The notes: generated from the letters alone by a model not told the origin. A DNA stretch of 64,000 bases from Macrostomum lignano (GCA_002269645.1 NIVC01000087.1:806001-870000); one strand, 5' to 3'. Positions 15,283 to 40,826 are shown, numbered from the stretch's first letter. Made by a program: numbers and translations.

Positions 15283-15326
15283 GTGAGTTCGGCTTGGTGT
15301 ATTATATTATCTGTGCTTCTCGTCTA

Positions 15327-15750
15327 AAGTCTCACCTGTGGCGCTTAAGTCTCACCTGTGGAGCTTAAGTCTCACCTGTGGCGCTTAAGTCTCACCTGTG
15401 GAGCTTAAGTCTTACCTGTGGCGCTTAAGTCTCACCTGTGGTAATAAAGTCTCACCTGTGGTAATAAAGTCTCACCTGTGGTACTAAAGTCTCACCTGTG
15501 GCACTAAAGTCTCACCTGTGGCACTAAAGTCTCACCTGTGGTAATAAAGTCTCACCTGTGGTAATAAAGTCTCACCTGTGGTACTAAAGTCTCACCTGTG
15601 GCACTAAAGTCTCACCTGTGGCACTAAAGTCTCACCTGTGGTGCTTATGTCTTACTTGTGGCGCTAAAGTCCCGTCTAAAATCTCACTTGTGGCGCTAAA
15701 GTCTTACCTGTGGCGCTTAAGTCCCGTTTAAAATCTCACCTGTGGCGCTA
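15327..15750. repeat. 20-bp minisatellite at the 5' end of Smad intron 1
   Basis: Unit AAGTCTCACCTGTGG(CGCTT/TAATA/CACTA), ~20 copies. Confidence 0.95.
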
Positions 15751-16349
15751 AACTATTACCATCAATGAGGCTTTATCTAACAAAAAACATTGTTCCATAG
15801 TGCCTAGTAGTTTAGAAAAGCCAATTTTTTCTTATTTCTCCCTGTCTTATTAGGCACAGGCTGTATATAATAATGTATAATCCGTAGGTAATGTAAGAAT
15901 AATTTGGCATATGAATGAGTAGACAGTGGCACAAGAAATGAATTACTACACTTATATGGGATTGGGGTACACGATATTCTGTACTGGCGAGACTGGATTG
16001 TAAATAGCTGACCAGATCTTGCCGTTGCCCGTAATTCTCCCTCAAATTCCCCTGCTATCTCGTTGACCGATCCTCAGCCAGCCTGATTGAGGAGGCCAAG
16101 GCCTTGCATGTGGCGCTAGGTCTTGGGTTTTCTTTTTTAGTCCTTATCGCCTGTCTGGGAGCCGGTCTGGAGCCTGATTATGATGCTAAGGTTAATTAAA
16201 TCCACAAGCGCATTAGGCTTCTATGTGTATCCGTGTTACCTCCGATTCTTTAAGTCAAAGTAATCAAGACGCAACTGGTAGGATGTCGTAAAACCAGTCA
16301 AGAGCTTTCAGACGGGGGGGAGTTTTACCGACCGCCGTTGTTGTTAAAA

Positions 16350-16677
16350 ACCGGGAACACTGTTGCTGCGGGCCAGGTGAGAAATAAATGGAGAATAGAT
16401 CAGAGAGAAGAGGAGAGAGGAGATAAGAAAGATGAGAGGAGACCGGAGAGGAGAGAAAAGAGAGAAGTGGAGAGGAGAGAAAAGAGAGAAGAGATGAGAG
16501 ATGAGAGGCGAGAGAAGATAAGAGATGAGAAGAGATGAGAGAGACGAGGAGGAAGATGAGAGAGGAGAGAAAAGATAGAAGAGGAGAGGAGAGAAGAGAC
16601 AAACCATGAGCGAGCGGTTTTAAAGGACCCGAGGGCCGGATAGAGAGGCTTCAGGGTCGCAGTCTCCCGACTCCTGC
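16350..16677. mobile_element. hAT-type MITE with GA-rich core, same family as 55737-56102 (left end degenerate)
   Basis: Shares gcgggcc...gag + purine-rich core + aaaggacccg..ggccggatagagaggctt with the 55.7-kb copy; ends in a hAT-like ...gcagtctcccgactcctg. Confidence 0.65.
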
Positions 16678-19600
16678 TTTATGCAGATACAGTTCGTATA
16701 CGGCCTTCTCAATACTAGATGAGCAATGTGTTTTTTTTATTTTCATAGCCGCCTTTGTCTCCGGTGTGAGGCGCCAGGTTTTATTTTTAAGCCTGTCTAG
16801 ACTGTCTTATAGAACTCCATTGATTGGCCTCTCCAATCTCAAATACCATGAAGCAGCTGCCCGCTGACTGTATATTGAACTATTGGATGTCATAATCCTC
16901 AACACAGCTTGAGCCGTTTCTTTGCCTAAGGAAAATATTCCTGATAGCGTGCGCGCATTGAGGGGGAGAGAAAGAGATTTCAATGCAAATGTTGGGTCTC
17001 ATACACAACTAGCAACTCTGCGCTGTCTGTCATACAGGCTTGCTGCTTATCTGCCTTGTCTGCCTGCCTGCGGCCTTTTGCTGCTTTCACCGTAGTCCGC
17101 CGCCGCCGCACCACCTCCCTCCCTCCCCCTTTAAGGCGCCAACAACTCGCGAGCTGGCGCCTCTCTCAATTCTCTTTTTAATGTGCCGCATTTATAATCT
17201 GTCGTCTTATTATTATCTAATTGTAATTTTAATGTAGGCTAAGACTTTTTTACAGTATAAAAGACTCAAGTCTTTAGTCTCATATACATTATTAGAGTTA
17301 TAAAAAAGTGAGTATTAAGCAAATAATAACTTTAATAGGGCTTATAGATAGCCGTAATGAATTGAATTGATCTTATTTCAAGCTCTGATTTGTGCATAAA
17401 TTCAGTTTCTTTTTACAAACACGTATGTTAGTTCTACAATAAGGACATTTCCATTGAGACTAATCGTTTGTATGCACATTATTAACTAGCAAAAGAGGAA
17501 AAGAGCAGCAAACAAAACTAGAAAGAGAGATTCAAGCTGCAAGCAAAGGTTAAAAGTGAAGAAAAGAAGAAGAAAGAAAGACACCAATGCAAGCTAATGT
17601 TCCTTTCTAAAAGCCTCAGAGCAAACTTGAGCAGCAGGTGTACGAGTGAAAGAGTAATGGAACTAAGAACAAGAGCAGAAAAACAGCAAAGTTTTCTTTC
17701 TGGTGGGCAGCACCGCAGCCGCGGCTTCACCGAAGCGCAACCGAAAAGTGGCCAACAGGCAGCCGATGGGTTCGAATAGATAGGAAGACAGGCCTTACCG
17801 AAGATGCCTAGAAGCGCGAGTGTGTATGAGAGAGGTTAGGGGAGAGGACTGGCACAGAGGCAGGGTTTTTAGTTAGTTTAGCAATCGCTGGCGCCCCCTT
17901 AATGACGGGGCCAGACGGGAAGATCCGGCCAAGGAAGGGCAAATGAGTGGAAAAATGTCGAGTCGCGGGGCTTCCTTGACCTCCTTGCCTATTGCAGGTT
18001 GGGAAGCGAGAGGCCAAGGTTCTGTTCGTTTTGTTAGGCCAACTAATTGGCTTGGTTAAAGCACTTAAAGCTTATAGGCCCTGGGATGGGACCAAGGGTT
18101 CGGGCTGGGTGGTCGGTGGATTGCGGCTGAAAAAATTCTCCCATCGCTTGTTGCTCGCCAACTCTCTGTCTGGCCTGTCTGTCTGTGTCTGTCTGCCTGT
18201 CTGCCTCCTCCACTTTCACTTAGTCTCCGAAAAAGAGGAAAAATTGCCGTCGCCATTAACTCGCGCCGTCGCTTCGCTCTCTAGAGCCGCGGAGAGAGAG
18301 AGGAGTTTAGTTGTTGTTCAACTGTCGCGACAAAGAGTCGCCGACCTCTTCTAATCCCCCCCCACAGCCTCTCCGTCGCGTCTCTTCATCTCGGCCTGAT
18401 CAGTCTGCCACTTTCCATTCCTTCCTTGTTTCGTGTTCCCCCCTCTCCCATGATCCTCTGAGAAAAGCCGCCGCCACGCTCGTTTCAAATTTTCCTACAT
18501 CCTCTTGTTTTGCGCTCGATTCCAAAAATAAAAAAACATATATTGGCGCTTGGTCTCGGTCGGTCCGATTGCTCATTTCCCTGTTGACTGTTAGCTAACT
18601 AAATACACAGCTAAAATCAGAAATAATGTTTGGCGGCGGCAGAGGCGGATAGAGCGCTTTCTAAATTCTTTTTCAAAGCGTATGATGATGGTTGTGCGTC
18701 GGAAAGGGAGGAATGGAGCAGAGCGAATCGTCGGGAATCCGAGCGGTCGGGGAGGTAGGCGAACAAAATTGCGGGTGTCACTGTCTGGTAGAGAAGCAGT
18801 CTAATGAAACATGACAGGTTTGCTTTTTTGCGATTTTTTGCTGGGGGGGGGTTGGGCGCGCCGCCTTCTTTGCCTAATGACTCTGCCAACCTCAGTCTCC
18901 CTCCATTTTCCTGCTTTTTTGTTGCCCACATAGCCAAGTGAAAGTCGGCTTGAAACAAAAATAACTGGCGCCGACTGGCTTGGCTGGCGGTCGGGCCGGG
19001 CGGCGGTGGGATCGATGTCGGAATGCTTGAATGATGCCGGCATCAGCTATCGAAATTATGAAAGCGAATAGCTGGAGGTGTAGTAAGACAGATCCCTTTA
19101 GTTTATGGGAGGCCTATCGGGAATACAAATAGCGGGCACACAGATTTAGCCAAACTGGAGCCTAGGAGGACAACAGTTCGAATTTTGCAGCTCGGTTGCC
19201 ACCAGAATGGCCTTACGACTGGCGACAGTTTGGCTGCTGGGCGGGGCTTGAGGGCTCTTGAAAAGCCGATAATAACTGGTACAGATCTAACTGCCATTGC
19301 TGTCATTTGCGGTTGGAAAATTAAGTGGCGGCTTAGTTATGGGGGGTTGGGGAGTGGGGGGGGGAGCTGACGGCCGCTTAAAATGGCTTCTTTTTTATGC
19401 GGCACCGTTCGCTCTCGACAGGTCCGGCGGCGGGGCCTGTCAGGGTGGCCCCACTCACTCAGCCAGCAACCTCATTCTTGTTAGTTAGTCTTCTCTCTAT
19501 TCTGTCTGCATGAAATTTATTTTATTCTTTCAATTTTCTTGCTTGAATCTGTCTGCGGCTGCTGCTGACCATTGCAGTCTCTTGTGTGTGTCCCCTAGTT

Positions 19601-19868
19601 TTGCCTCTTGTCAGGCCAGAGCGGTCGGTGGGGGGAGGGGGAAGGGGAGGGGGAGACAGCAGAAAGAAAAGTCGCAATTCGTGTCTCCGTGTGTCTAATA
19701 AAGCCTCTGGCCTGTCCCACCGTTCTGTCTGGTCTCTCCTTCTGTTTAGTTGGGTAGGGGGGGGGCCTCTCAGATAGAGAAAGAAATAGAGAGAGAGAGA
19801 GACAGAGAAAGAACCCCGACAGACAGGCACCTTGGCGTGAGGGGGAAGAGAGTGGGTGCTGCTGCAGC

Positions 19869-19921
<53 letters not shown>

Positions 19922-20784
19922 CTGGCGGCTGGCTGTCGGGGGCCAGCCGGCCTCGGACCGTAGAGGGTGGGGGGGGGGAAGAGTCGCCACGGGCCTGCGC
20001 GTGCGGGCATTTTTACTTACTAGACTGGGCTTAGCTTAACTCTGCTGCCACTGAGGCCTCTCTGTCTGCCGCTGAGGCCCCTCCTCCACAGCTCTCCCAA
20101 ACCCTCGGCGCACTTGATTTACACACTCACACACACTGGACCGAAGAATGAGTCTCTGTGACCCTCTCCCCTCCGCTTCCCCCCTCACTGGTTAGACGCG
20201 CCCATTAGCTCAGTTAATAGCCCCCCCTTGACTAAGTGACCCCGATAGAGGGGGTGTCAGGCTAGTGAGCTGCCTCTTTCCTCCCTTTATCCCCCCCCCC
20301 CCAGATAGTTAATCCTGCCTCCGTACCTGCCCTTGCTCTCTTTTCAACTTACCCCCCTCTCTTTACTCTATCCCTCTAACAGTCTAGGCCGGCCCTTCCA
20401 TCGTGACCCTTCGTGTCTCTTCCCAAGCTCCCTAGCCCATTTATACTGCCGCCAGTCTGTCGGTGGCGGGAGGGGGGCCCTGGTTCAGAACGGGTCGCAG
20501 CACGTGTGTAGTGCAGTAGTTAGATTATTGTGTGCTTTGCGGATAAGAAAAACTGCCCCGAGGTCTGGTGGCGGTGTAGTGAATAGGTAGGGGTTGGATT
20601 ATTTCGGTGCGGAAGCAATATTCACTGTGTAGGTAGATGCATGTTGAAGAAGTTAAAGAGGCTTGAAGCAAGATATTGTAAATGTCGTCTTTTAATCTGG
20701 TTGCCGCCTGGGCATGAGCATGAGCAATCCTATTAAGTCTGTAATGCTGAAAATATGTTTAGACATGCTAATGCTTTAAATTGG

Positions 20785-20966
<182 letters not shown>

Positions 20967-21726
20967 CGCTTCATTCAATAAGGGTCTTTTGGTGTTTGCT
21001 TTTTTTCTACTTCATCATAGACAGCAATGAGATAGATGGGTTGGAGTGAGTGAAAGAGACAGTTGGAGTGCGGTATCCGACTGAGCTCAAGAGGAGGCGT
21101 GTGTCCCGGGGCACATCAGCCTTTCTCCAGTTTCCACTTTGTTGGCTTCGGTCTGCTGGACTCTTTGTGTAGAGGCTCCAAGCTGTTCCCCATGGTATTA
21201 ATCCCTTTTATTGTCTTTCCCTGCAGTGCCCCGGATGCTTTGTCACAAGCTCTGCAGTCTCGCGTGTTCCAGACACCTCCGCCATCTCCGCTGAGGCAAT
21301 ATTTGGCGCCTTGAATTGTGAGCTCAAGTGTGACAGGCGGCCCGGCTGTCGCTTATTAGTTAGTAGAGCTACGACGTCAAATCCCAGACGGAGGGACCAT
21401 CTGATGAATAAATAATAACAATACCTGATGAGAGGGCAGGTTAGTCTTGAGGGTGTGAATTGCAATTAGCGGCGCAATGGCGGCATCAATATTAATAGTG
21501 TAGTGAGGCTTTCGCTTTCTCTCTCTCCTCTCTACTGGCGTGCCGTTCGTCTACACGACACATTGGAATGGATTAGCTTTTTACCTTTGTTTCTTAGATT
21601 GTTTTATTACTGCTCATCGTAACTGGCGTGTTTCTATAGTCATCATTTGTTTTAGAGCAGGCTTGACTGGGTTTTATTAGCATTCGAACGCACTTTGCAC
21701 ACGATTGCTTTGTCGCAAGACAATTT

Positions 21727-21845
21727 GCGCGCTTCTGATAGTTTGCGCTCCTGACAGTGCGCGCTTCTAACGGCTTGCGCGCTTCTGATAGTTTGCGCTT
21801 CTGACCGTGCGCGCTTCTAACGGCTTGCGCGCTTCTGATAGTTTG
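21727..21845. repeat. Degenerate short tandem repeat
   Basis: Recurring gcgcgcttctgatagtttgc / gcgcgcttctaacggcttgc. Confidence 0.75.
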
Positions 21846-22594
21846 TGCTTAGCAAGCCCACACACTGCTTACGAGCGTACTCTTATGTGGTTATGTTGAG
21901 CAATACTAATAGTAATAACAGACCTAGCATTCCTTCCCTCCGAAGGTGTGATAATCCCTCTCGCCCTCTCACACGCGCCTCTGAACGCATTCCATTTATT
22001 TCATTGCGGATCTCTGTGCCTGTTCCATTGCCGGGGAGGGGGGGAATTAGAGGCTAAGGGAGTGTCTTTCGCGCCTCTCACTTTTCCTATTGGCATTTAC
22101 CCCATTCTATTAATTCCCGTTTTCTTTTTTCTTTTTTTTCTGTTTGAACGCAGCAAAGCGCAGCTGTTGGCACGCGCGGAGTAGCGGGGCTAATCTTATA
22201 GAGCTTTGGCCTCTAAGCCCCGCGCTCCAGACCCCCCAGAGCTGCTCCCCTTCCTGGTCTGCGCTTCCCCGGTCACAGCCCTGCCACCAACACTCAGCAG
22301 TGCTGCATACTCACACAAGTCACCGTGTGTTAACAGCTGGAGGCCATTCCATTTCTAAATGCTTGAAATTCTGCAATCCTAATAGATGTACACCTATAAA
22401 ATGTCTTCCGAGGTTATACATTTATATACAGATATTTTCATAGTCCCCCTCTCTCTATTCCTCCGTCACCTTTTTGACAAACAAACAAAAATATGTGAGG
22501 GACGCAATGCGTTTGCTTTGGGCGAAGAATGTATTGGCCCGAAATGTAAGGATGGCGCTTGAACAATAGCATACGCGTCAATTGGTGTTCACGG

Positions 22595-22830
22595 CTTCTA
22601 AACCATGTTTATCGGCTCCTAACTCATGTTTATCGGCTCCTAAATCATGTTTATTGGCTCCTAAATCATGTTTATCCGCTCCTAAATGATGCTTAACGAC
22701 TTCTGAAGGATGTTTATCGGATCCTAAATCATGTTTATCTGCTCCTAAATGATGCTTAACGGCTTCTAAAGGATGTTTATATCGGACCCTAAATCATGTT
22801 TAACCCATCCTTGATGCTTAGCGGCTCCTA
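22595..22830. repeat. Degenerate ~21-bp tandem repeat
   Basis: Recurring ctcctaaatcatgtttatcgg. Confidence 0.75.
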
Positions 22831-25169
22831 GAATAATGTTAACCGGCGATAAAATCGGTATTAACAGGTCTTCGATAGTTCAATGTCACAATACTCGTAA
22901 TTAATATCAGTCATACCTAGTTGTCTGAAATTGTGGGCACACGGTCTAAAATCTGTCTCAAATATAGACAAACTCAATGACATAAATGTGGAAGCATTGC
23001 GTTATTAAATTAAGCTATAGACCTAATCAAATAACCGATTGGCTTGATTGCATTTTCTGATATTTGAATGCAAGAAATATCTTCTATATTTTATAAGCTA
23101 ATCTCTTCTAGTAGTCCACCAGATTAAGTGGCTATGTAGCCGGGTGGCTGGGGTAGGACAGAATAGATAGCAAGCCTAGGCCTGTCAATATGCCGCTATC
23201 GTGTAGTTACGTGTATATTTTTCGGCTGGCTTGTAAACCTTTGCACGCAATGTTATTAATACCCATGCCATAGTTCTACTGGGCGCGCTTTCAGTAAAAG
23301 CCATGGGATGACAGACTTCCCCCTGAAATTTAGACTATATCTTTCTCCCTATATATGTGTGTATATTTTGTCCTTTCTATCATATAGCTCTCGTTCTTCC
23401 CTACCGCTATCTGTTCCCCTAAATGCAATGCCTATCTATCTGCACAATCTTTCACATATCCGAATTCTGATGCCTATTTTGAATTTCGCTTTCGGATTGT
23501 AATTCTGCTGTCTGTTTGTAGGGCTAAGGATAGTTGAGAAGTAGAAAAAAGCAGCAATAAAAAGTCCCCTAGGAAAGAGAAGCAGGCGGTCTAGACTACC
23601 TAGCTCAGTATTCTTACTCTCTAAATCCCTAATTCTATTAGATTTATTGTTTCTGTGACTGCTGCAGCTGTTCTCCCTTTAACTGTTTATTTGTTGCCAG
23701 GCAAGACGCCACACAGGCAGTCTATATAGAGAATACAGTATATGAGAGAAGACGGGGCGGCGGTGGCGGCTCCGACCGGGGGGGGGGTTATCTCGGCGCC
23801 ATCGCATCAGGGCGTCAGTCGGGCTAACCGGCGGGCGGCGACTGCGGGCTGCTCTAAGCTTAGCTGTTTAGCCGGCTCAAATTTGCATTTATTCGCATTC
23901 ACTTGCCCCGCTGGTGCCTATATATAACTGTCTGTGTCTGTCTCAGTTCAAGTAACTCTTCAAGCATTAAGCTGTCTCAACTGACTGACTGTTCAGTCTC
24001 TGCTATCTATGATCTGATCAGGCGCCGTTAGTCCGCATCTGTCTGGCTATTTCGATTCCTTGCTATCTCCACATTTTGTAGCGACTCCCGTGTTTTTCTC
24101 GTTCGTTGGTTGATTGCTTTGATTTTCGCTGGCGCCGGCGCAGGAGCCGTCGCCTTCCTTTTGATCTCTGCCTGCCTGCCTGCCTGCCTTTTTTGTCAAG
24201 CAATTATTCAATGCTTGCGTATTTCATTTCGATTAGTTTTAAAGCGGCTACGAGGTACCAGCATTTATGCAGCTATCCAAATTCAATTGTGCGGCAGCTA
24301 TCATCATTGCCTTCTTTCCGTTCTCATCGTCATTAACTCTAGAAGCGGCTGCTTAAATTAACCCCCTCCTCCTCCTGCCTGGCGCCTTCTCCATCATCCC
24401 GCGGCACTCAATTTCTCTAATTCATCATCATCCAGCCTCTCTCTGGCCCATCATCCACTGCCGCCCTTCCCTATGCAATGTTATAGAGAGAATGATCGCA
24501 CTATGGGTCCAAGGCCCCAGGTGTGTGTGTGCGTGTTTTTGTTTATCGATAATCCTTCATGTCCTTCATGTCGCTTTACATGCATGCTCGATTATGACAG
24601 CGTCTGTTTGCCCTGTCCAGACTCCGCCTCTCTTCTTTGGCTTTGTTGATCGAAAACTCTTGATCGAATGATTGAATATGGACCTTTTAACAGTGAGGTT
24701 CCGGTCGCTTAGCCAATATAGCCAGAAGCGTTTATTGGCTTTAATTCAATCAATCGATCAATCAATCAATTCGAGCATTTTCAATTCTGAGATGAAAGTC
24801 CCAGCTCTGTTTGCTTTGATATTGGCAACGCTTATATAACTATATGGCCCATGGGTCTTTCTGTTTGTTTGACCGAAGCTAAAATATTTGTAATATTCTA
24901 ATATGTACGGTAGTTTCAGTACCTTGGCTTGGCTATTCCCATTTATAGCCCTACCTGTCCATATAAACTAAGGCAGCGTTGTGCACAGTGGTATAAATAA
25001 ACAGAACTAGCTGCTTCCCGGTGGGTCCATCCTCTGCTTTTATCTGCGCTTTACAGCCGTGTTAAATGGTCAAATAGGCCGGGCAGGTCGGAAACTGTTA
25101 TAGCAATATGTTTTGTTTTATTTCATTTTACTGTTACTTACTATTACTACTGTTTTCTCTAATTTACAG

Positions 25170-25268
25170 ATCTGCACAGCCTGATTGACAGACTGAGTGA
25201 GCTGGAGCTGAAGCAGCCTCTGATTGCCCTGTCAGACAATGAAGTGTCCTCGTCTGGCTGCAGTAGCG
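25170..25268 (+). CDS. SMAD6/7: Inhibitory Smad exon 2 (99 nt, linker)
   Basis: Acceptor ttttctctaatttacag|AT and donor AGCG|GTAAGG; phase 1 to 1, open frame DLHSLIDRLSELELKQPLIALSDNEVSSSGCSS. Supported by splice signals, not homology. Confidence 0.7.
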
Positions 25269-25344
25269 GTAAGGCTTTTTTTATGCGATAACCTGCTGTA
25301 GCCGGCTGCATGAATCACAGATTGGGCCATTCACAAAATTCAGG

Positions 25345-25690
25345 CTATTATCCCTTCAGGCTGTTATCCCCTTCAGGCTGTTATCCCTTCAGGCTGTTAT
25401 CCCTTCAGGCTGTTATCCCCTTCAGACTGAGTGTTATCCCCTTCAGGCTGTTATCCCCTTCAGACTGAGTGTTATCCCTTTCAGGCTGTTATCCCTTCAG
25501 GCTGTCATCCCCCTCAGGCTGTTATCCCTTCAGGCTGTCATCCCCCTCAGGCTGTTATCTCTTCAGGCTGTTATCCCCTTCAGACTGAGTGTTATCCCTT
25601 TCAGGCTGTTATCCCCTTCAGACTGAGTGTTATCCCTTTCAGGCTGTTATCCCCCTTCAGGCTGTTATCCACTTTCAAGCCCTGTTATCC
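25345..25690. repeat. 16-17-bp minisatellite in Smad intron 2
   Basis: Unit ~TCAGGCTGTTATCCCT. Confidence 0.9.
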
Positions 25691-25715
25691 AGCTTGACCT
25701 CTGTTGAAACCGCAG

Positions 25716-26710
25716 ACTCGCTACTGTCGGCCAGCCGCAAAAGTTGGCTCACCACAACTAGCAGCGCCGCCAAGCAGCATCAGCAGCAGCATCGGGACAC
25801 TTGCAGCGGCGGCAGCAGCAGCGGCGGCGGAGGCTGCGGCAGTTGCAGCTGCTGCTCTTGCTGCTGCTGCTACTCCGCTTCGGTGTCCGATGCGCACTCG
25901 TCCACTGCCGCAGCGGCTTCCATGGCGGATGCCGAAACCGCAGGCAACGTTAATGCAGCCCTGTCAGAGCAGCGGCATCAGGCCTACTGGTGCGCAGTGG
26001 CCTACTGGGAAGGCCGCAGCCGCATCGGTCAGTTAGCCCGGGTTCGAGACCCCGTGTTCCGCGTCTGCCAGCGCGGTCCAGTAGCCGGAACCGGAAGCGA
26101 CAGTGTGATGTCGCTGGAGTCCCTGTCGGCCGCCGCTGCAACCGCCGCCGCTGCCGATCCCGCCGTCGTAGCCGTCGATCCCGATGGCGAATTGGCCAGA
26201 CAGGCCGCCAAGACTCGCGCCAAAATTGGCGCCGGGGTGGCGCTGGTACGGCGCCGACGTCGACGCCGACGACAGCACCGTCAGAAGCGATGCCAGTTCG
26301 AATTCGAAGACGACAGCGACGGGGACGTCAATAACGACGACGTTGGCGACGACGCGGCGACGGACGCCACGGAGCTGATGATCTTCAATCAATCCGACCA
26401 CGCCGTGTTTGTCCACTCGCCGACGTTGCAGCCTCTGTCGTTGTCATCCGCGGCGGCATCTAGCGCCGGGCCCTATCAGGCCGTGAAGCTGCCGCCTGGC
26501 TACTGCTTGAAGGCTTTCGACTCTTCAGCTGCCGGACTGCTGTGCCGGGCCCGCCGCCTCGGCCAGCTGAACCACCTGTGCTCCCCGGCCGCCGCCGACC
26601 CGTTCACTGTCCGCCTGAGCTTTGTGAAAGGCTTCGGAGCGGCCTATCAGAGACAGGACATCATCTATTGTCCCTGCTGGCTGGAGGTTATGCTCAGCTT
26701 CAATGCCTAG
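25716..26710 (+). CDS. SMAD6/7: Inhibitory Smad exon 3 (linker + MH2), stop TAG 26708-26710
   Basis: Acceptor aaaccgcag|AC (phase 1). MH2 motifs WCAVAYWE, KTRAKIGAGVAL, IFNQSDHAVFVHSPTL, PPGYCLKAFD, FTVRLSFVKGFG...YQRQDIIYCPCWLEV. No C-terminal SSxS, so I-Smad. The joined CDS is 1617 nt (538 aa). Confidence 0.95.
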
Positions 26711-30880: not shown

Positions 30881-31171
30881 AATAAGAAATTCCATTTTCG
30901 AAGAAAAAATTCTCTTGTCTGAGTAGGAAATTCCCTATATCACTTAGAGTGGGAAATTCTTCCCTCAACTAACGCTAATCCCAAATAGACAAGCCCGTCT
31001 TGCTATGGGGCTCAAAATTTCATCATTCACTGCACTAATCTACCATGAATTCTGATGCCATTTCACTGCCATTTCGTATTTCTGCTGAAGAAAATTTTGA
31101 ATCTCGCTAGAAAATCTAGACAGAGACAGCAGACAATCAACACATATTAATTGAAGCTACTAGGAGCAGCA

Positions 31172-32281
31172 ATGAGCTTCCGCAGAAATCTGGCCAATTG
31201 GCGCTCCCGAGTCCCGGTGCTCAGCACGGCCGGCGCGGTGCCAGTGCGCACAGAGAAGGGCGAGATGTACTTAGAAAAAGTGAAAGTGAAGCGCTACGTA
31301 GCCGGCAAGCGGCCGGACTTCGGCGACGGCGGCGCTGGCGGCGGCGGCGAGGACGACTCCGACTATGACGACGAGCAGCAGGGCGAGCAGCTGGACAGGC
31401 GCCCGCGAGCGTCCGCCGCCTCAGCCGACGACCCGTTCGTTCGTCCAAGGAGAGAACCGGTGGCGGCCGGACACCCGTCAGCCAGGCCGGCCGTGTCCGA
31501 GTTGACGGCCGATCCGCGCGATCGTCGGCTTCAACGCCTGATGGCGGCGGCCGGTTCGCGCGCCGGCCGACGCCGCCGCCGAGGAGCTGCAGCCGACGAA
31601 GACGACGACGAAGACGACTCGGAGGCCGGCGACGACGACGGGTCGGGCTACTCGGACGACTCCGACGAGGAGGAGCTGGACCGGCTCGAGCGGCACCGGC
31701 GCTACCGCGGCGAGGCCGTCGCCGACGTTGGCGGCTACGATCACCATCACCAGCAGCAGCAGCAACAGCAGAGAGGCTCCGCCGCTGCCGGCGGTGGCGC
31801 CAACGAAGACGACGAAGAGCAGCTGGACGAGGCCGAGCTGGAGCACCGGCGCGCGATGCTGCGGATGCGCGCCAAGCAGCGCGAAGTCGAAGAGGAACTG
31901 ATGGCCCGCCAGGAAGAGGGCGGCGCGGCCGGCAGCGGCAGCAGCGGCGCTGGCAGCGACGGAGACGAGGAATTAACTGAGGAGGAGTACACCAGCGACG
32001 AGGACGAGGCCCAGCCGCGGCTCAAGCCGGTGTTTGTCCGCCGGCGCGACCGGGTCACAGTCGGCCAGCAGGGCCCGGCCGTGCCCGCTAGCGCCAGCGA
32101 AGCTCCCACCGGCGGCGCGTCGGCCGTGGCATCAACGGAAACGCCGTCGTACGTGGCCGAGGAGCGGCGTTCGACCACGCTGCAACTCGTGCGGGCGGAG
32201 GCGCGCCAAGAGGCCGAGGAGGCGAAGGCCCTGGCTGCAGCGTTCGACAACGTCGATTCGGCCGACGAAGAGGACGACGAG
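31172..32281 (+). CDS. MFAP1: Microfibrillar-associated protein 1 (spliceosomal B-complex protein), exon 1
   Basis: STAGAVPVRTEKGEMYLEKVKVKRYVAGKRPDF and EEEYTSDEDEAQPRLKPVFVRRRDRVT are MFAP1 signatures; ends GAG|GTCTGA (phase 0). Confidence 0.93.
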
Positions 32282-32844
32282 GTCTGAGCGGCAGCTCATG
32301 CATTCAGTTCCATCTGTTGTTTTCTCTTCTCCTAGTAGATCTGGGAAGCTAGATTCTTCTCTTCTAGCAGATTGGAAAATTTTCTCTTCTAAAAGATCTT
32401 GGAAGAAATCTTTTTTCTTAGAATCGAATATCTGTGAAGAATAACCTCCGTGAGATCTAGGGAGATATACTAGACGAAAATATAGAAAAAAGTCCCTATC
32501 CTAAAAGATGTAGAGAGAGAGACGAAGTTCATCTTCAAAAATATCTTAAAAGACTTTTCTTACGTACAAGATCTGGAAACAATCCATATGCTAAAAATGG
32601 TCTTCTCTTCTCCTAAAAGAGGTGACAAGAATCTTTTCTAGTACAAGATCTGGAAACAATGTCTTCTAGAAGATGGGACAATGATTTTTTCTAATACAAG
32701 CTTTGGAAACAATCTCTTCTCCTAGAAGATGGGGCAAGAATCTTCTCTAGTACAGGATCTGGAAACAATCTCTTCTTTTGTGTGATGTCATACAAGATGC
32801 TCTTCTACAATGGTTTGCTATTTCAAACATTTCCCGCACCTCAG

Positions 32845-33342
32845 GTGGCCTACGAGGCGTGGAAGCTGCGCGAGCTGAAGCGGCTGAAGCGCGACAGAGA
32901 GGAACGCGAGGCCCGCCAGCGGGAGCAGGAGGAGCTGCAGCGGCTGCGCAACATGACGGAAGAGGAGCGGCTGGCCGAGCAGCGCAGACGGCCGAAGGTA
33001 ATCGACAACAAGGCGGACAAAGGCAAGTACAAGTATCTGCAGAAGTACTACCACCGCGGCGCTTTCTTCTTGGACGGCGACAACGACTTGTTGCGCCGCG
33101 ACGTCACCAAGCCAACGCTGGAGGACCACTTTGACAAAAGCGTGTTGCCCAAGGTTATGCAGGTGAAGAACTTTGGCCGGGCTGGCCGGACAAAGTACAC
33201 GCATCTGGTTGATCAGGATACAACCGGGACGGACAATCCTTGGGCGGTGGACAGCGCCCAGGCGCAGCGGTTTCATTCTGTCAAAGGCGGCGGCATGCGA
33301 GCGGTGCTGCAGCGGCCTAGCGCCAAGCGATCTGGCGTTTGA
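32845..33342 (+). CDS. MFAP1: MFAP1 exon 2, stop TGA 33340-33342
   Basis: Acceptor ttcccgcacctcag|GTG; YEAWKLRELKRLKRDREERE, KGKYKYLQKYYHRGAFF, DHFDKSVLPKVMQVKNFGRAGRTKYTHLVDQDTT. The joined product is 535 aa. Confidence 0.96.
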   Translation: MAYEAWKLRELKRLKRDREEREARQREQEELQRLRNMTEEERLAEQRRRPKVIDNKADKGKYKYLQKYYHRGAFFLDGDNDLLRRDVTKPTLEDHFDKSVLPKVMQVKNFGRAGRTKYTHLVDQDTTGTDNPWAVDSAQAQRFHSVKGGGMRAVLQRPSAKRSGV

Positions 33343-34869: not shown

Positions 34870-35455
34870 AACTATAGACAGATGCAGGCTGTTGCAGCAA
34901 CTCTATAGACAGGTGCAGGCTGTTGCAGCAACTCTATAGACAGGTGCAGGCTGTTGCAGCAACTCTATAGACAGGTGCAGGCTGTTGCAGCAACTCTATA
35001 GACAGGTGCAGGCTGTTGCAGCAACTCTATAGACAGGTGCAGGCTGTTGCAGCAACTCTATAGACAGGTGCAGGCTGTTGCAGCAACTCTATAGACAGGT
35101 GCAGGCTGTTGCAGCAACTCTATAGACAGGTGCAGGCTGTTGCACCAACTCTATAGACAGGTGCAGGCTGTTGCAGCAACTCTATAGACAGATGCAGGCT
35201 GTTGCAGCAACTCTATAGACAGGTGCAGGCTGTTGCAGCAACTCTATAGACAGGTGCAGGCAGTTGCAGCAACTCTATAGACAGGTGCAGGCTGTTGCAG
35301 CAACTCTATAGACAGGTGCAGGCTGTTGCAGCAACTCTATAGACAGGTGCAGGCAGTTGCACCAACTCTATAGACAGGTGCAGGCAGTTGCACCAACTCT
35401 ATAGACAGGTGCAGGCTGTTGCACCAACTCTATAGACAGGTGCAGGCTGTTGCAA
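34870..35455. repeat. 31-bp minisatellite immediately upstream of the RMT2-like ATG
   Basis: Unit CTCTATAGACAGGTGCAGGCTGTTGCAGCAA. Confidence 0.97.
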
Positions 35456-35492
35456 AGTGTCCCAAATTTCGCTTCGCTGCCCGCGCACCCGC

Positions 35493-36009
35493 ATGGAAGC
35501 CGAGACGTCAACAGTGGAGTCGCGCAAACGCAAGGCAGCCTCGCCGTCCCGGCAGCCTCCGGACGGCAGCAACGGTGACTGTCCAGTTGAGGAGGAATCT
35601 GCCACCTGCTGGGAGCCGTCTCCGGACGATGTCCAGCTGGTGCTGGCTGCTAGCAAAGGTGACGTGAAGACGGTTCGCCGCCTACTAGCGGAGACGGGCG
35701 CCGATCCGTGCTACCAGGACCACCGCACCGGCATGTCCGTGCTGATGGCAGCCGCAGCCTCTGGCAGCGCCGACACAGTCCGCTGCCTGCTGGACAATGG
35801 CGCTCCCTGGAACGCTGTTGATCGCCAGTACCATTGTGCCGGCGAGTACGCCACTTGGAATGGGCACCAGGCCGTTGTGGACCTGCTGCTGAATCACGCG
35901 GCTGCTTCCGAGCTGCTCCTTGGCGCACTGCTGAGCGGGGAGCGCGCTCTGGGCGTCACCGAGCTGCAGCGCGAGTACATGCGCCAGCGGCTCACCTATT
36001 GTGGCGGCG
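35493..36009 (+). CDS. RMT2: RMT2-type protein arginine methyltransferase exon 1 (ankyrin repeats)
   Basis: LVLAASKGDVKTVRRLL, SVLMAAAASGSADTVRCLLDNGAPWNAVD, AGEYATWNGHQAVVDLLL, SELLLGAL; donor GGCG|GTGAGA (phase 1). Confidence 0.88.
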
Positions 36010-36039
36010 GTGAGAGCTTGGTTGGCTTATAACTGAAGT

Positions 36040-36506
36040 GCGGAATGGCTTGGCTGACAGGGGCGGAATGGCTTGGCTGACAGGGGCGGAATGGCTTGGC
36101 TGACAGGGGCGGAATGGCTTGGCTGACAGGGGCGGAATGGCTTGGCTGACAGGGGCGGAATGGCTTGGCTGACAGGGGCGGAATGGCTTGGCTGACAAGG
36201 GCGGAATGGCTTGGCTGACAGGGGCGGAATGGCTTGGCTGACAGTGGCGGAATGGCTTGGCTGACAGAAGCGGAATGGCTTGGCTGACAGGGGCGGAATG
36301 GCTTGGCTGACAAGGGCGGAATGGCTTGGCTGACAGGGGCGGAATGGCTTGGCTGACAGGGGCGGAATGGCTTGGCTGACAGTGGCGGAATGGCTTGGCT
36401 GACAGAAGCGGAATGGCTTGGCTGACAGGGGCGGAATGGCTTGGCTGACAGAAGCGGAATGGCTTGGCTGATAGGGGCGGAATGGCTTGGCTGATAGGGG
36501 CGGAAT
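36040..36506. repeat. 23-bp intronic satellite, left part
   Basis: Unit GGCGGAATGGCTTGGCTGACAGG. Confidence 0.97.
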
Positions 36507-37801
36507 CACAGACAATATAGAATATAGACCAGTAAAGTGAAGAAAAAAGTGGGCCATTTTCCCCCATAAGAAACTGGTCCCTCTCACCCACCCCAGCTCG
36601 ATCGATATGTGGTACAGGGCGGGCCTCTTTTCCATTGTGCTCCTATTGGACACATGCAATTGAGATACATTTTTTTCTTCTTTTTTTTACATAAAACGCC
36701 ATGAAAACCAAATACATAAAAGTAATGAAATTAAATTAAATTACCCCGAAATGTCCTTCGAAGTCCCAGCTTTCAGATTAAGAAAAATTGCTGTGCGCAG
36801 CAGCTTTCTGTCTCCTTCCTGCCTTTCTTAATAAGTGCGACATGTCTTTCGCAATTTTCTTCATGCGAATTCTGATGTAAAAAATGCTCATAACTTTCTT
36901 GACTCAATACCTGTGCTAACAGCTGCAGCTTGTGTGACTCAATACCTGTGCTAACAGCTGCTGAATGCGAATCTAATTCAGAGAATAGCGGTTGAAATTC
37001 AAAGTGAAATTCAAATTCAAAGTCTCTCGAACAGCGATTTAGCTTGAAAAGCAGCTATCAAAGCTGGAGCGGCGAATAATCGTTTCGGTGTTCAGCAGAA
37101 TACGTATAGTTCGTGGAGTGCTTGGACGCAGAATCCTGGAAGGCATCGTACACACTTGAGATCCATTTCCGTAGAGAAGGTGGATGCATGGAAGCTGGAA
37201 AACTTTCTCACGTATTCGTATGCCTTAGGACTGTAATAGTGCAACGTGGAAGCAAATCGCCGAACTTCAGGAGGAAATTTTTTATCCTCTTGTTTTTAGT
37301 TGGCACTAGTGCTTCATCCACAATATTCTTTGCCTACAGCACTTTCACAATTTCTGTCAGTGACTTTGACCGCGCCCTTAGTCGCTGGTGCTTCTTGTTC
37401 AGCTCCCTGAGCACAGCAATAGTTGCCACATTTTCTGGCGCTTTTCTCCTTTTTGATACACTATGAAAGCTGGCTGAGGCTGCATGGATAAGAATGCTTT
37501 AATTGGTTTTTTGCTGGATATTTTTGCAAGGAACTTGTAATTCAAATCAAATTCAATTTCAATTTCAATTCAATCAATTCAATTCAAATCTAATTTACAT
37601 TTATTTTGCCTCCCTGGGGTTTTAAACTCTTTATAATTAGTAAATTTCAAGCTTGAAAACTTGCACTTGCCCATTTTTTGTCCCACATATCGATCGAAGT
37701 TGGGGCTTTGTGGAAGGACCATTTTTTGTGTTGCTTTTTTGTCCCACAACGCGCCTGGGCAGGCCCCCGAGATTCGCAGTCTATATTCTATATGGTCTGT
37801 G
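36507..37801 (-). mobile_element. Internally deleted P-element-superfamily (THAP9-like) transposon, 1295 bp
   Basis: 23-bp TIRs CACAGACAATATAGAATATAGAC / GTCTATATTCTATATGGTCTGTG (1 mismatch); 8-bp TSD GGCGGAAT; 19-bp subterminal inverted repeat at 36598-36616 and 37679-37697. Minus-strand remnant KKFPPEVRRFASTLHYYSPKAYEYVRKF...LRKWISSV...LPGF, plus a C-terminal-like FYIRIRMKKIAK. Confidence 0.9.
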
Positions 37802-39055
37802 GGCGGAATGGCTTGGCTGACAAGGGCGGAATGGCTAGGCTGACAGGGGCGGAATGGCTTGGCTGACAGGGGCGGAATTGCTTGGCTGACAGGGGTGGAA
37901 TGGCTTGGCTGACAGGGGCGGAATTGCTTGGCTGACAGGGGTGGAATGGCTTGGCTGACAGGGGCGGAATGGCTTGGCTGACAGGGGCGGAATGGCTTGG
38001 CTGACAGGGGTGGAATGGCTTGGCTGACAAGGGTGGAATCGCTTGGCTGACAAGGGTGGAATGGCTTGGCTGACAGGGGCGGAATGGCTAGGCTGACAGG
38101 GGCGGAATGGCTAGGCTGACAGGGGCGGAATTGCTTGGCTGACAGGGGTGGAATGGCTTGGCTGACAGGGGCGGAATTGCTTGGCTGACAGGGGTGGAAT
38201 GGCTTGGCTGACAGGGGCGGAATGGCTTGGCTGACAGGGGCGGAATGGCTTGGCTGACAGGGGTGGAATGGCTTGGCTGACAAGGGTGGAATCGCTTGGC
38301 TGACAAGGGTGGAATGGCTTGGCTGACAGGGGCGGAATGGCTTGGCTGACAGGGGCGGAATTGCTTGGCTGACAGGGGTGGAATGGCTTGGCTGACAGGG
38401 GCGGAATGGCTTGGCTGACAAGGGTGGAATGGCTTGGCTGACAGGGGCGGAATGGCTTGGCTGACAGGGGCGGAATTGCTTGGCTGACAGGGGCGGAATG
38501 GCTTGGCTGATAGGGGCGGAATGGCTTGGCTGATAGGGGCGGAATGGCTTGGCTGACAGGGGCGGAATGGCTTGGCTGACAGGGGCGGAATGGCTTGGCT
38601 GACAGGGGCGGAGTTGCTTGGCTGACAGGGGCGGAATGGCTTGGCTGATAGGGGCGGAATGGCTTGGCTGATAGGGGCGGAATGGCTTGGCTGACAGGGG
38701 CGGAATGGCTTGGCTGACAGGGGCGGAATGGCTTGGCTGACAGAAGCGGAATGGCTTGGCTGACAAGGGCGGAATGGCTTGGCTGACAGAAGCGGAATGG
38801 CTTGGCTGACAAGGGCGGAATGGCTTGGCTGACAGGGGCGGAATGGCTTGGCTGACAGGGGCGGAATGGCTTGGCTGACAGCAGCCGAATGGCTTGGCTG
38901 ACAGGGGCGGAATGGCTTGGCTGACAGAAGCGGAATGGCTTGGCTGACAGGGGCGGAATGGCTTGGCTGACAGAAGCGGAATGGCTTGGCTGACAGGGGC
39001 GGAATGGCTTGGCTGACAGGGGCGGAATGGCTTGGCTGACAGGGGCGGAATGGCT
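37802..39055. repeat. 23-bp intronic satellite, right part
   Basis: Same unit and orientation as 36040-36506. Confidence 0.97.
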
Positions 39056-39139
39056 CATACCGCTTCAACCTGGCAGAGCCAGACTATCAGTTGGCGTAGA
39101 CTATCAGACTTACCCTCACACCTCCGTGCTCCCCCGCAG

Positions 39140-39789
39140 GCGACCTGCTACTCGACGGCGAAGGCTACGCCGTCATGATGGCCTGGGAGCAGCCGCTCAT
39201 GGAGCGACACGCCAGCTACATCTGCCCGCGGCCCGGCCTGCGCGTCCTGAACGTCGGCTTCGGCATGGGCATCGTAGACACCGAGCTGCAGAAACTCGGC
39301 CCGGCCAGCCACACCATTGTTGAAGCGCATCCGGACGTTCTGGCCAGAATGCGCGACCAAGGCTGGCCGGACAAGCCCGGCGTCCGGATCGTGTCCGGCC
39401 GCTGGCAGGACGTCGTCGCCGACCTTGGCCCGTTCGACGGCGTCTTCTTCGACACGTACGCCGAGGACGACCTTGACTTGCACTCGTTTCACGCCCACCT
39501 GCCCCGGCTGCTGGCGCCCGGCGGCCGCTACGCCTTCTACAATGGCATGTGCCCGGACAATGTCTTCTTCCACGCAGTCGCCTGCGAAGTTGTCCGACTG
39601 CGGCTGCTCCGGCTCGGCCTGCGGTGCACCTTCCGGCCGCTTCCGGTCAAAGTGGACGACGCCAAGTTGTGGCAGGGAGTGCGCGATCGCTACTGGCACT
39701 TCGACACCTACTACCTGCCCGAGGTGTGCCGGCCCGAGGAGGAGGACAGCCAGTCAGCCGCGGCGCCGATGGATGCCAGTTCCGAGTGA
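39140..39789 (+). CDS. RMT2: RMT2-type methyltransferase exon 2 (class I SAM domain), stop TGA 39787-39789
   Basis: Acceptor ctcccccgcag|GC (phase 1); AVMMAWEQPLM, VLNVGFGMGIVD (motif I), HTIVEAHPDV, GRWQD, FDGVFFDTY, LPRLLAPGG, YWHFDTYYLP. The joined product is 388 aa. Confidence 0.92.
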
Positions 39790-40825: not shown

Positions 40826-40826
40826 A

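What the first reader, a model, noticed from the sequence alone, without database searches (positions are those of the whole stretch)
35493..39789. Intact fungal/plant-type RMT2 (ankyrin + delta-N-arginine methyltransferase) gene in an animal genome
Seen: a 388-aa two-exon gene with ankyrin repeats fused to a GAMT-like SAM domain. It carries RMT2-type motifs (GAPWNA, SELLLG, VMMAWEQPLM, LNVGFGMG, DTYYLP) rather than the ankyrin-less GAMT architecture. It lies between metazoan-context genes (Smad is animal-specific) and has a GT-AG intron full of host-type satellite, so contamination is unlikely. Established: yeast Rmt2 makes delta-N-monomethylarginine on ribosomal protein L12, and the family is described from fungi and plants; I recall no characterised animal orthologue. 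Inference: either horizontal acquisition or patchy ancestral retention, implying that type IV arginine methylation may exist in this animal lineage.
Basis: partly seen in the sequence, partly recalled or inferred. Interest (0 to 1): 0.75.

Follow-up and report, generated by a model that had tools for sequence, protein, structure and literature searches.

The report
Flatworm RMT2-type arginine methyltransferase gene
The gene is real and intact: it is the already-annotated Macrostomum lignano copy of an ankyrin + RMT2-type methyltransferase. All sampled parasitic flatworm classes and choanoflagellates also carry it, so it looks like an old inherited gene that most animals lost, not a recent foreign import.

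Summary
Exons 35493-36009 and 39140-39789 join through a GT-AG phase-1 intron into a 388-aa protein with ankyrin repeats and a GAMT/RMT2-type SAM methyltransferase domain.

The window is Macrostomum lignano assembly GCA_002269645.1, contig NIVC01000087.1. The protein is identical to UniProt A0A1I8GUV0 ("RMT2 domain-containing protein") and to PAA91451.1. A second genomic copy has the same MFAP1-RMT2 arrangement.

Orthologues at 45-56% identity occur in about 25 named flatworm species (Monogenea, Cestoda, Trematoda). Several are already named "arginine N-methyltransferase 2". They form one clade (99.5% NJ bootstrap) that mirrors the species tree, lie among ordinary animal genes on chromosome-scale scaffolds, and share introns.

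The family is pan-eukaryotic, not "fungal/plant". It includes three choanoflagellates and an unidentified marine, probably animal, lineage.

The flatworm clade is not nested in any donor group, and codon composition is host-like. Ancient vertical retention with loss in most animals is therefore favoured over HGT, but deep nodes are unresolved.

No animal member has been characterised, and reviews still say type IV PRMTs are restricted to fungi/plants. This is a member of a known family, of modest interest.

The parts
35493..36009 (+). Exon 1: start codon, low-complexity N-terminus (aa 1-45), ankyrin repeats (aa 49-136, nt 35637-35900), linker helix; ends in phase 1 of codon 173
   Evidence: the AlphaFold model has pLDDT >90 from aa ~45 onward
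36010..39139 (+). Intron (3130 nt, GT..AG, phase 1)
   Evidence: The splice is identical to the public models A0A1I8GUV0 and PAA91451.1. In the second genomic copy the whole gene spans only 1568 bp for a 392-aa product, so its intron is about 390 bp
36040..36506 (.). 23-bp satellite, about 20 copies, inside the intron
36507..37801 (.). About 1.3-kb insertion with 23-bp terminal inverted repeats (36507-36529 / 37779-37801); a non-autonomous DNA-transposon-like element splitting the satellite
   Evidence: not aligned to the second copy L001
37801..39055 (.). 23-bp satellite, about 55 copies, inside the intron
39140..39789 (+). Exon 2: GAMT/RMT2-type SAM methyltransferase domain and stop codon. 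Contains W188-E189 (39184-39189), motif I LNVGFGMG (39247-39270) and D277-T278-Y279 (39451-39459)
31151..33342 (+). Upstream neighbour MFAP1 (two large exons)
   Evidence: Pfam MFAP1 E=5e-58; the same neighbour is found at the second copy
14754..26710 (+). Further upstream neighbour, a Smad gene (MH1 exon 14754-15368, MH2 exon 25589-26710)
   Evidence: annotated as a 538-aa MH1+MH2 protein in the public record
34872..35454 (.). 31-bp satellite ending 39 nt upstream of the start codon
39896..40338 (.). 20-bp satellite starting about 100 nt after the stop codon

Best explanation
This is the Macrostomum lignano orthologue (locus BOX15_Mlig014211g1) of the eukaryote-wide RMT2 family: an N-terminal ankyrin-repeat module fused to a GAMT-like class-I SAM methyltransferase.

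Shown here: the gene is intact and host-embedded, has a second near-identical copy, and belongs to a flatworm-wide orthologue group. That group has been inherited vertically at least since the common ancestor of Macrostomorpha and Neodermata.

Inferred (history): the flatworm gene descends from the copy present in the choanoflagellate-animal ancestor and was lost in most other animal lineages. It was not acquired horizontally.

Inferred (function, from family membership and conserved active-site residues): the enzyme binds SAM through motif I (LNVGFGMG) and the HTIxEAHP acidic loop. It holds a guanidino group between E189 and D277 and transfers one methyl group to a guanidino nitrogen of a protein arginine. 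By analogy with yeast Rmt2, the product would be delta-N-monomethylarginine on ribosomal protein uL11/RPL12, with the ankyrin module serving as the protein-substrate docking surface.
For: Identity and provenance. The window is identical to GCA_002269645.1 NIVC01000087.1 over the 24.3 kb compared. The protein is identical to A0A1I8GUV0 / PAA91451.1. A second copy on NIVC01001025.1 is collinear at 95-98% with MFAP1 upstream.

Family. Full-length hits at 41-56% identity go to proteins named arginine N-methyltransferase 2 / type IV PRMT in flatworms, algae, plants and fungi. A basidiomycete 'protein-arginine N5-methyltransferase' is among them. GAMT matches at only 26-28% over the catalytic core. 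The AlphaFold model has pLDDT 89.9 and pTM 0.85. Its best PDB folds are GAMT (TM 0.77-0.79), five orders of magnitude in E-value ahead of the next hit.

Active site. W188, E189, N210, G212, G214, G216, D219, H230, E234, H236, D277 and T278 are invariant in 60 diverse members. E189 and D277 align with rat GAMT E45 and D134.

Vertical descent. NJ bootstrap gives flatworms 99.5%, Neodermata 100% and Cestoda 100%, with Macrostomum as sister. The Taenia and Schistosoma orthologues lie on 10-83 Mb scaffolds among kinesin, CENP-S, GOSR1 and SPC25 genes and share 3 intron positions. GC3 is 0.81, against 0.78-0.81 for the neighbouring MFAP1.

Holozoan ancestry. Ank+RMT2 genes occur in Monosiga brevicollis (on a 1.05-Mb scaffold, 7 introns), Hartaetosiga balthica and Barroeca monosierra. 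The nearest non-flatworm clade sits on marine contigs whose DDX18 neighbour best-matches only animals, and which also carry an MTBP_C domain.
Against: Deep nodes of the NJ tree are unresolved. Flatworms + the marine clade get 28% bootstrap, and flatworms do not group with choanoflagellates. No maximum-likelihood tree and no GAMT outgroup could be run.

No non-flatworm animal appears by name in the two top-120 hit lists. Vertical descent therefore requires many independent losses.

No intron position is shared between Macrostomum, Neodermata, the marine clade and Monosiga.

The animal identity of the marine clade is inferred only from neighbouring genes.

The biochemical activity and the RPL12 substrate are extrapolated from yeast. 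S. cerevisiae Rmt2 itself was not in the retrieved sets, and no RMT2 outside yeast and Candida has been assayed according to the papers read.
Confidence: 0.7

Rival explanations
1. Ancient horizontal transfer: a stem-lineage flatworm (or stem lineage of flatworms plus the marine clade) acquired the ankyrin-RMT2 gene from an alga or protist. It was afterwards inherited vertically and gained host introns and codon usage.
For: No other named animal phylum appears among the best hits. The best non-flatworm scores of the Macrostomum protein are to green algae and streptophytes (Mesostigma 52%, Auxenochlorella 54%). In the NJ tree the flatworm clade sits nearer stramenopile and unnamed marine sequences than choanoflagellates, without support. 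Intron positions are not shared with Monosiga.
Against: The flatworm clade is not nested in any sampled donor clade. Plants/streptophytes, chlorophytes and fungi form their own groups. High scores to green algae are what slow-evolving sequences would give anyway, since between-group p-distances are all 0.52-0.63. Choanoflagellates possess the gene. The closest relative of the flatworm clade is probably itself an animal. Composition is host-like.
Confidence: 0.22
2. The protein is a small-molecule guanidino methyltransferase (GAMT-like, for example phosphagen precursor synthesis) rather than a protein arginine methyltransferase.
For: The only solved structural relatives are GAMTs, and the guanidino-binding E and D are conserved. 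No RMT2 outside fungi has been assayed.
Against: Identity to GAMT is only 26-28% and limited to the core, against 41-56% full-length identity to RMT2-named proteins. The family-wide fusion to a protein-binding ankyrin module, modelled as one compact unit (pTM 0.85), argues for a protein substrate. GAMT has no ankyrin domain.
Confidence: 0.05
3. Contaminant or assembly artefact: the gene is not part of the flatworm genome.
For: Exons are much more GC-rich (66%) than the window average (45%).
Against: Neighbouring flatworm exons have the same GC and GC3. The gene is physically linked to MFAP1 and Smad on a 950-kb contig and again on a second contig. Its intron is filled with the same kinds of satellites as the surroundings. 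Orthologues lie on chromosome-scale scaffolds of other flatworms.
Confidence: 0.01

Closest known systems
Saccharomyces cerevisiae Rmt2 (type IV protein arginine methyltransferase, EC 2.1.1.322), which forms delta-N-monomethylarginine on ribosomal protein Rpl12 (Niewmierzycka & Clarke 1999 and Chern et al. 2002, as cited in PMC9017121, and PMC3787734 table)
   Same: Same protein family by database naming of the hits (RMT2 domain, Pfam PF27704 GuanidinoAc_N-MeTrfase). It has a GAMT-like SAM domain with the conserved WE and DTY guanidino-binding residues. A fungal 'protein-arginine N5-methyltransferase' (Mrakia) is recovered by the window protein at E=6e-46.
   Different: Fungal members are the most divergent group from the flatworm proteins (mean p-distance 0.63). 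The yeast protein itself was not retrieved, so no direct alignment was made. Activity, substrate and biological role in any animal are untested.
Flatworm 'arginine N-methyltransferase 2' / 'RMT2 domain-containing' proteins (Fasciola hepatica, Clonorchis sinensis, Schistosoma japonicum, Taenia crassiceps, Paragonimus westermani, Cichlidogyrus casuarinus and others)
   Same: True orthologues: 45-56% identity, the same ankyrin + methyltransferase architecture, one clade with 99.5% bootstrap that follows the species tree.
   Different: Neodermatan genes have 3-4 introns at positions not used in Macrostomum, which has a single intron elsewhere. They also carry insertions in the linker and in the methyltransferase loop. 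None has been studied experimentally.
Guanidinoacetate N-methyltransferase (GAMT; PDB 3orh, 1xcj, 1khh)
   Same: Same fold (TM 0.77-0.79), the same SAM motif I, and the same Glu/Asp pair around the guanidino group.
   Different: GAMT is a roughly 236-aa single-domain small-molecule enzyme without ankyrin repeats. Identity is only 26-28%. The window protein belongs to the RMT2 branch.
Choanoflagellate ankyrin-RMT2 proteins (Monosiga brevicollis MONBRDRAFT_33022, Hartaetosiga balthica, Barroeca monosierra)
   Same: Same architecture and conserved motifs. They are the closest unicellular relatives of animals.
   Different: About 42% identity. They do not group with flatworms in the NJ tree, and their intron positions differ.

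Membership tests
RMT2 / type IV protein arginine methyltransferase family | C-terminal class-I SAM methyltransferase domain of the GAMT/RMT2 type (Pfam PF27704 / PROSITE RMT2 domain) | tested here: met
   PF27704 is precomputed on the identical public protein. UniProt labels the identical sequence 'RMT2 domain-containing protein'. By sequence, PDB holds only GAMT as a relative, and the fold match to GAMT is TM 0.77-0.79. The local Pfam copy lacks PF27704 and gives only generic Methyltransf_25/11 hits.
RMT2 / type IV protein arginine methyltransferase family | N-terminal ankyrin repeats fused to the methyltransferase domain | tested here: met
   Ank_2 E=2e-12 at aa 49-136. The same architecture is found in nearly all 120+ homologues. 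The model shows one compact two-domain unit, pTM 0.85.
RMT2 / type IV protein arginine methyltransferase family | Closer to RMT2-named proteins than to GAMT | tested here: met
   Identity is 41-56% over 72-97% of the query (54-55% over 41-43% for two Volvocales hits) to RMT2-named proteins, at 267-400 bits. GAMT gives about 60 bits and 26-28% over about 130-230 residues. No rooted tree with GAMT as outgroup was made.
RMT2 / type IV protein arginine methyltransferase family | Conserved SAM-binding motif I and guanidino-binding acidic residues | tested here: met
   N210, G212, G214, G216, D219, E234, W188, E189, D277 and T278 are invariant in 60 members. E189 and D277 align with rat GAMT E45 and D134. 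The catalytic role of those GAMT residues is from my memory of Komoto et al. 2004, not from a tool.
RMT2 / type IV protein arginine methyltransferase family | Direct homology to the characterised S. cerevisiae Rmt2 sequence | not tested
   The yeast protein was not among the retrieved sequences. The nearest named Dikarya members are Mrakia frigida 'protein-arginine N5-methyltransferase' and Agyrium rufum 'Arginine N-methyltransferase 2'.
RMT2 / type IV protein arginine methyltransferase family | Forms delta-N-monomethylarginine on a protein substrate (Rpl12 R67 in yeast) | not testable with these tools
   Needs enzymology or mass spectrometry.
Guanidinoacetate N-methyltransferase (GAMT) | Single-domain protein of about 230-240 aa, without ankyrin repeats, closely similar to vertebrate GAMT | tested here: not met
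   The protein is 388 aa with ankyrin repeats and only 26-28% identical to GAMT.
Horizontally acquired gene in an animal | Recipient sequences nested, with support, inside a donor clade | tested here: not met
   The flatworm clade (99.5%) is outside the plant/streptophyte, chlorophyte and fungal groups. Deep nodes have under 50% support. This is NJ only, so a weak test.
Horizontally acquired gene in an animal | Restricted to one species or shallow clade; foreign composition; lacks host-type introns | tested here: not met
   The gene is present in Macrostomum, Monogenea, Cestoda and Trematoda with species-tree topology. GC3 is 0.81, like the neighbouring genes. It has spliceosomal introns in all four flatworm and marine genes examined.

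The most novel reading that the evidence does not exclude
Type IV (delta-N) arginine methylation, which reviews describe as confined to fungi and perhaps plants, is an active animal modification in Platyhelminthes and in at least one other, still unidentified, marine animal lineage. It would have been retained from the choanozoan ancestor and lost in vertebrates and the other well-annotated animal phyla. The enzyme would then be a conserved, host-absent activity in all major parasitic flatworm groups.
Probability: 0.5. Interest if true: 0.5.

Novelty: new member of a known kind. Interest (0 to 1): 0.33.

Why it matters
The PRMT literature, including a 2023 Schistosoma paper and a 2026 review, still states that type IV arginine methyltransferases exist only in yeast/fungi and perhaps plants. 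The sequence data show a well-conserved RMT2 orthologue with an intact active site throughout flatworms and in choanoflagellates.

If the enzyme is active, delta-N-methylarginine is an animal modification after all. Macrostomum lignano, where RNAi and transgenesis work, would be a convenient system to find its substrate and role.

The gene was not seen by name in any vertebrate among the best 120 hits of either search, and a published table lists no human orthologue (PMC3787734). It is conserved in flukes, tapeworms and monogeneans, so it is also a candidate parasite-selective enzyme.

None of this changes the classification. It is an ordinary member of a known family whose sequence is already deposited and automatically annotated.

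Tried and rejected
(1) Contamination or mis-assembly. Rejected by linkage to MFAP1/Smad on two contigs, host-like GC3 and satellite-filled intron.

(2) GAMT identity. Rejected on architecture and similarity.

(3) Intron-position comparison as a test of deep vertical descent. Taenia and Schistosoma share three positions, but nothing is shared among Macrostomum, Neodermata, the marine clade and Monosiga. The Macrostomum intron (codon 173, phase 1) and a marine-clade intron (phase 1) lie 5 codons apart, so they are not the same site. Uninformative.

(4) Crude count of exclusively shared residues. Flatworms share 5 states with the marine clade and 0-1 with any other group. Small groups give similar counts by chance (marine + rhizaria 5), so this is only a weak hint.

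(5) Looking up the window's spliced protein in read-derived assemblies to get direct RNA evidence. I relied instead on the identical public gene models and on the uninterrupted 79%-identical contig.

(6) Trying to name the marine lineage. Its DDX18 neighbour gives only animal hits at 66-74% and nothing closer with a name. The closest cDNA is from a Tara metatranscriptome run, not a single-species library. The phylum is left open.

(7) No ML tree program was available, so only NJ with Kimura distances and 200 bootstraps was run. Deep relationships should not be over-read.

(8) Literature searches for RMT2 or type IV PRMT together with flatworm terms found no paper that discusses the flatworm gene.
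Full report
WHAT IS THERE

Reading the region and joining 35493-36009 to 39140-39789 gives a 1167-nt open frame, 388 aa plus stop. The donor is GCG|GTGAGA, the acceptor is CCCCGCAG|GCG, and the intron is phase 1 in codon 173. Pfam finds ankyrin repeats at residues 49-136 (Ank_2 E=2e-12; Ank E=5e-12) and generic class-I methyltransferase matches at 208-305. Against all PDB sequences, the C-terminal half matches only guanidinoacetate methyltransferases (human 3orh E=1e-15, rat 1xcj/1khh). The 3130-nt intron consists of a 23-bp satellite (about 20 + 55 copies). The satellite is interrupted by a roughly 1.3-kb element with 23-bp terminal inverted repeats. The gene is not flanked on both sides by Smad and MFAP1. 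Both lie upstream on the same strand: Smad MH1 at 14754-15368, MH2 at 25589-26710, and MFAP1 at 31151-33342. Downstream there are about 7 kb of satellites and then an annotated ORF without domain hits.

WHERE IT COMES FROM AND WHETHER IT IS ALREADY KNOWN

The best database hit (99% identity) is Macrostomum lignano BOX15_Mlig033725g2. Cluster look-up shows that the window's spliced protein is identical to UniProt A0A1I8GUV0, "RMT2 domain-containing protein". Apart from four extra N-terminal residues it is also identical to GenBank PAA91451.1, BOX15_Mlig014211g1. The 24.3 kb fetched around that gene from GCA_002269645.1 contig NIVC01000087.1 is base-for-base identical to window 25481-49789.

A second copy (allele or homeologue; 4 amino-acid differences) lies on contig NIVC01001025.1. 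It is collinear with window 26.9-45 kb at 95-98% identity, again with MFAP1 upstream. Its gene spans only 1568 bp, so its intron is about 390 bp, and it lacks the TIR element. Several other UniProt entries from an older assembly are frameshifted versions of the same gene. A 79%-identical protein is encoded as an uninterrupted ORF on a 1271-bp short-read contig ending in Illumina adapter. It reads straight across the splice junction, which is what a transcript of a related Macrostomum would look like.

FAMILY

Full-length homologues at 41-56% identity are abundant (216 at E<=1e-5 in the word-indexed search; 412 cluster representatives at E<=1e-30 in the exhaustive search). Where named, they are "arginine N-methyltransferase 2", "protein arginine N-methyltransferase 2", "type IV protein arginine methyltransferase" or "RMT2 domain-containing protein". 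Nearly all carry ankyrin repeats plus Pfam PF27704 (GuanidinoAc_N-MeTrfase).

An alignment of 60 diverse members has invariant W188, E189, N210, G212, G214, G216, D219, H230, I232, E234, H236, W261, Q262, F275, D277 and T278. In the HMMER alignment to GAMT, E189 and D277 fall on rat GAMT E45 and D134. From memory of the GAMT structural work, those residues hold and deprotonate the guanidino group.

An AlphaFold model built on that alignment is confident (mean pLDDT 89.9, pTM 0.85). Only residues 1-40 and the last about 15 are disordered. Its best PDB fold matches are GAMT (TM 0.77-0.79 on the target, 26-28% identity, E about 1e-12 to 1e-13). The next hit is at 1e-7. No RMT2 structure exists in the PDB copy. 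The protein is therefore an RMT2-branch member of the GAMT/RMT2 superfamily, not a GAMT.

DISTRIBUTION

Named animal hits are all flatworms:
- Monogenea: Cichlidogyrus, Protopolystoma.
- Cestoda: Spirometra, Mesocestoides, Rodentolepis, Hymenolepis, Taenia, Hydatigera, Echinococcus.
- Trematoda: Fasciola, Echinostoma, Paragonimus, Dicrocoelium, Calicophoron, Clonorchis, Opisthorchis, Trichobilharzia, Heterobilharzia, several Schistosoma.

Non-animal hits cover streptophyte and chlorophyte algae, land plants, stramenopiles, rhizarians, a euglenid, dinoflagellates, amoebozoans, chytrid, blastocladian, mucoromycete and dikaryan fungi. They also include three choanoflagellates: Monosiga brevicollis, Hartaetosiga balthica and Barroeca monosierra. 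The label "fungal/plant-type" is therefore too narrow. This is an ancestral eukaryotic gene that the sister group of animals still has.

PHYLOGENY

NJ trees were built on 115, 202 and 73 sequences. All recover one flatworm clade whose internal topology is the species tree, with Macrostomum sister to Neodermata and Cestoda and Trematoda each monophyletic. In the 73-sequence, 326-column analysis with 200 bootstraps, support is 99.5% for flatworms, 100% for Neodermata, 100% for Cestoda and 72% for Trematoda. The clade is not inside the plant/streptophyte, chlorophyte or fungal groups. All deeper nodes have under 50% support.

The Taenia crassiceps and Schistosoma guineensis genes lie on 10.5-Mb and 83-Mb scaffolds. 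Their neighbours are ordinary animal genes (kinesin, CENP-S, GOSR1 and SPC25). They have 4 and 3 introns, three of them at identical positions and phases. The Macrostomum gene has GC3 of 0.81. The two MFAP1 exons have 0.78-0.81 and the Smad exons 0.63-0.72. The gene has thus been a resident flatworm gene at least since the Macrostomorpha-Neodermata ancestor. A recent transfer into M. lignano is excluded.

THE NEAREST NON-FLATWORM RELATIVES

The closest outgroup is a set of four marine metatranscriptome clusters (P0030, P0277-P0279). Their best named hits are, reciprocally, the Macrostomum proteins (48-50%). Exon fragments of the same gene lie on three independent Tara/ENA metagenome contigs. 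All three have the same gene order: UQ_con, DDX18-type helicase, ankyrin-RMT2, mitochondrial carrier. These contigs are 37% GC and very gene-dense. Their introns are 44-75 nt, 47-53 nt in four of the five mapped DDX18 introns (the fifth is 177 nt), and one in the RMT2 gene is GA-AG. They encode a fragment matching the MTBP_C domain above Pfam's threshold. In the search with the DDX18 neighbour, every named protein among the best 120 is from an animal: vertebrates at 72-74%, two ascidians at 71-72%, one insect at 66%.

I conclude, with perhaps 75% confidence, that this is an unannotated marine animal and hence a second animal lineage with RMT2. Its phylum is open. The tiny introns, a GA-AG intron and ascidian hits recall appendicularian genomes, but that is a recollection, not a test. 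Flatworms share five exclusive residue states with this clade against 0-1 with any other group, and have their lowest mean distance to it (0.52). The grouping gets only 28% bootstrap.

HISTORY: RETENTION VERSUS TRANSFER

For retention:
- Choanoflagellates have the gene.
- A probable second animal lineage has it and is the flatworms' nearest relative.
- No donor clade can be named.
- Composition and intron content are host-like.

For an ancient transfer into the flatworm stem:
- No other named animal phylum turns up in either top-120 list.
- Flatworms do not group with choanoflagellates.
- No intron position is shared with Monosiga or the marine clade.

I put retention at roughly two-thirds and ancient HGT at roughly one-fifth. 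The tools at hand cannot settle it: NJ only, no outgroup, and hit lists capped at 120.

LIKELY MECHANISM

Shown: an intact two-domain protein with all family-invariant SAM-binding and guanidino-binding residues.

Inferred: SAM is bound by motif I (LNVGFGMG, 209-216) and the acidic HTIVEAHP loop (230-237). An arginine guanidino group is positioned between E189 and D277 and receives one methyl group. By analogy with yeast Rmt2 the product is delta-N-monomethylarginine on ribosomal protein uL11/RPL12 (PMC9017121; PMC3787734). The target arginine lies in a QNRQ motif that I recall as conserved in animal RPL12; this was not tested here. The ankyrin module, modelled as packed against the catalytic domain, would be the docking surface for the protein substrate. 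No RMT2 outside yeast and Candida has been assayed according to the papers read, so substrate and product remain extrapolations.

COMPARISON WITH THE LITERATURE, AND NOVELTY

A 2023 paper on Schistosoma mansoni CARM1 states that the type IV enzyme "is reported only for yeast". A 2021 methods paper says the same. [quoted passage not shown] A yeast-human comparison lists no human orthologue of Rmt2. Four full-text searches found no paper discussing the flatworm genes.

But the sequence is deposited, automatically annotated with an RMT2 domain, and has named orthologues across parasitic flatworms. It is an ordinary, uncharacterised member of a known family in a lineage where the family has not been studied. 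It is not a new kind of system and not a demonstrable HGT. Interest is modest. It would rise if delta-N-methylarginine were shown in flatworm RPL12, or if the second animal lineage were identified.

Noticed in passing
L004:4685-6089, L005:9513-10857, L006:7913-9266 (Tara/ENA metagenome contigs): An unidentified marine eukaryote carries an ankyrin-RMT2 gene next to a DDX18-type helicase. Its genome is very compact (about 7 genes per 12 kb, 37% GC), with introns of 44-75 nt, one of them GA-AG. It has an MTBP_C domain, and the best named hits of its DDX18 are all animal. It is probably a second animal lineage with RMT2; the phylum is not determined.
   Followed up: partly
window 36507-37801: A roughly 1.3-kb insertion with 23-bp terminal inverted repeats (22/23 complementary) and no long ORF splits the intronic 23-bp satellite. 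It is absent from the second genomic copy of the gene. It looks like a non-autonomous DNA transposon.
   Followed up: partly
window 33436-47093: The gene is embedded in an unusually dense series of unrelated satellites. They are 35-bp (33436-34422), 31-bp (34872-35454, ending 39 nt before the ATG), 23-bp (in the intron) and 20-bp (39896-40338). An ATCT microsatellite (40827-41856) and a 30-bp array of about 159 copies (42346-47093) follow. Array lengths differ between the two genomic copies.
   Followed up: partly
L001 (GCA_002269645.1 NIVC01001025.1) versus window 26933-45000: A second, collinear copy of the Smad-distal/MFAP1/RMT2 region at 90-98% identity. Its RMT2 protein has four amino-acid differences and its intron is about 390 bp. 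This fits an allele or a homeologue of the partly duplicated M. lignano genome.
   Followed up: partly
window 10672-11250 (-): An ORF with Sleeping-Beauty/Tc1-type transposase helix-turn-helix and paired-box-like matches: a transposase remnant in the AT-rich region upstream of the Smad gene.
   Followed up: no
window 25481-35480, as annotated in L011: In the gene list returned for this contig, no gene is called between the Smad gene and the RMT2 gene. Yet clear MFAP1 exons lie at 31151-33342, and the other copy has a 535-aa MFAP1 model. One old UniProt model (P0004) fuses MFAP1 to RMT2.
   Followed up: no
L007 (Taenia crassiceps) and L008 (Schistosoma guineensis): The cestode and trematode orthologues share three intron positions and phases, none of which is used in Macrostomum. 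The single Macrostomum intron lies elsewhere, which implies intron turnover within flatworms.
   Followed up: yes
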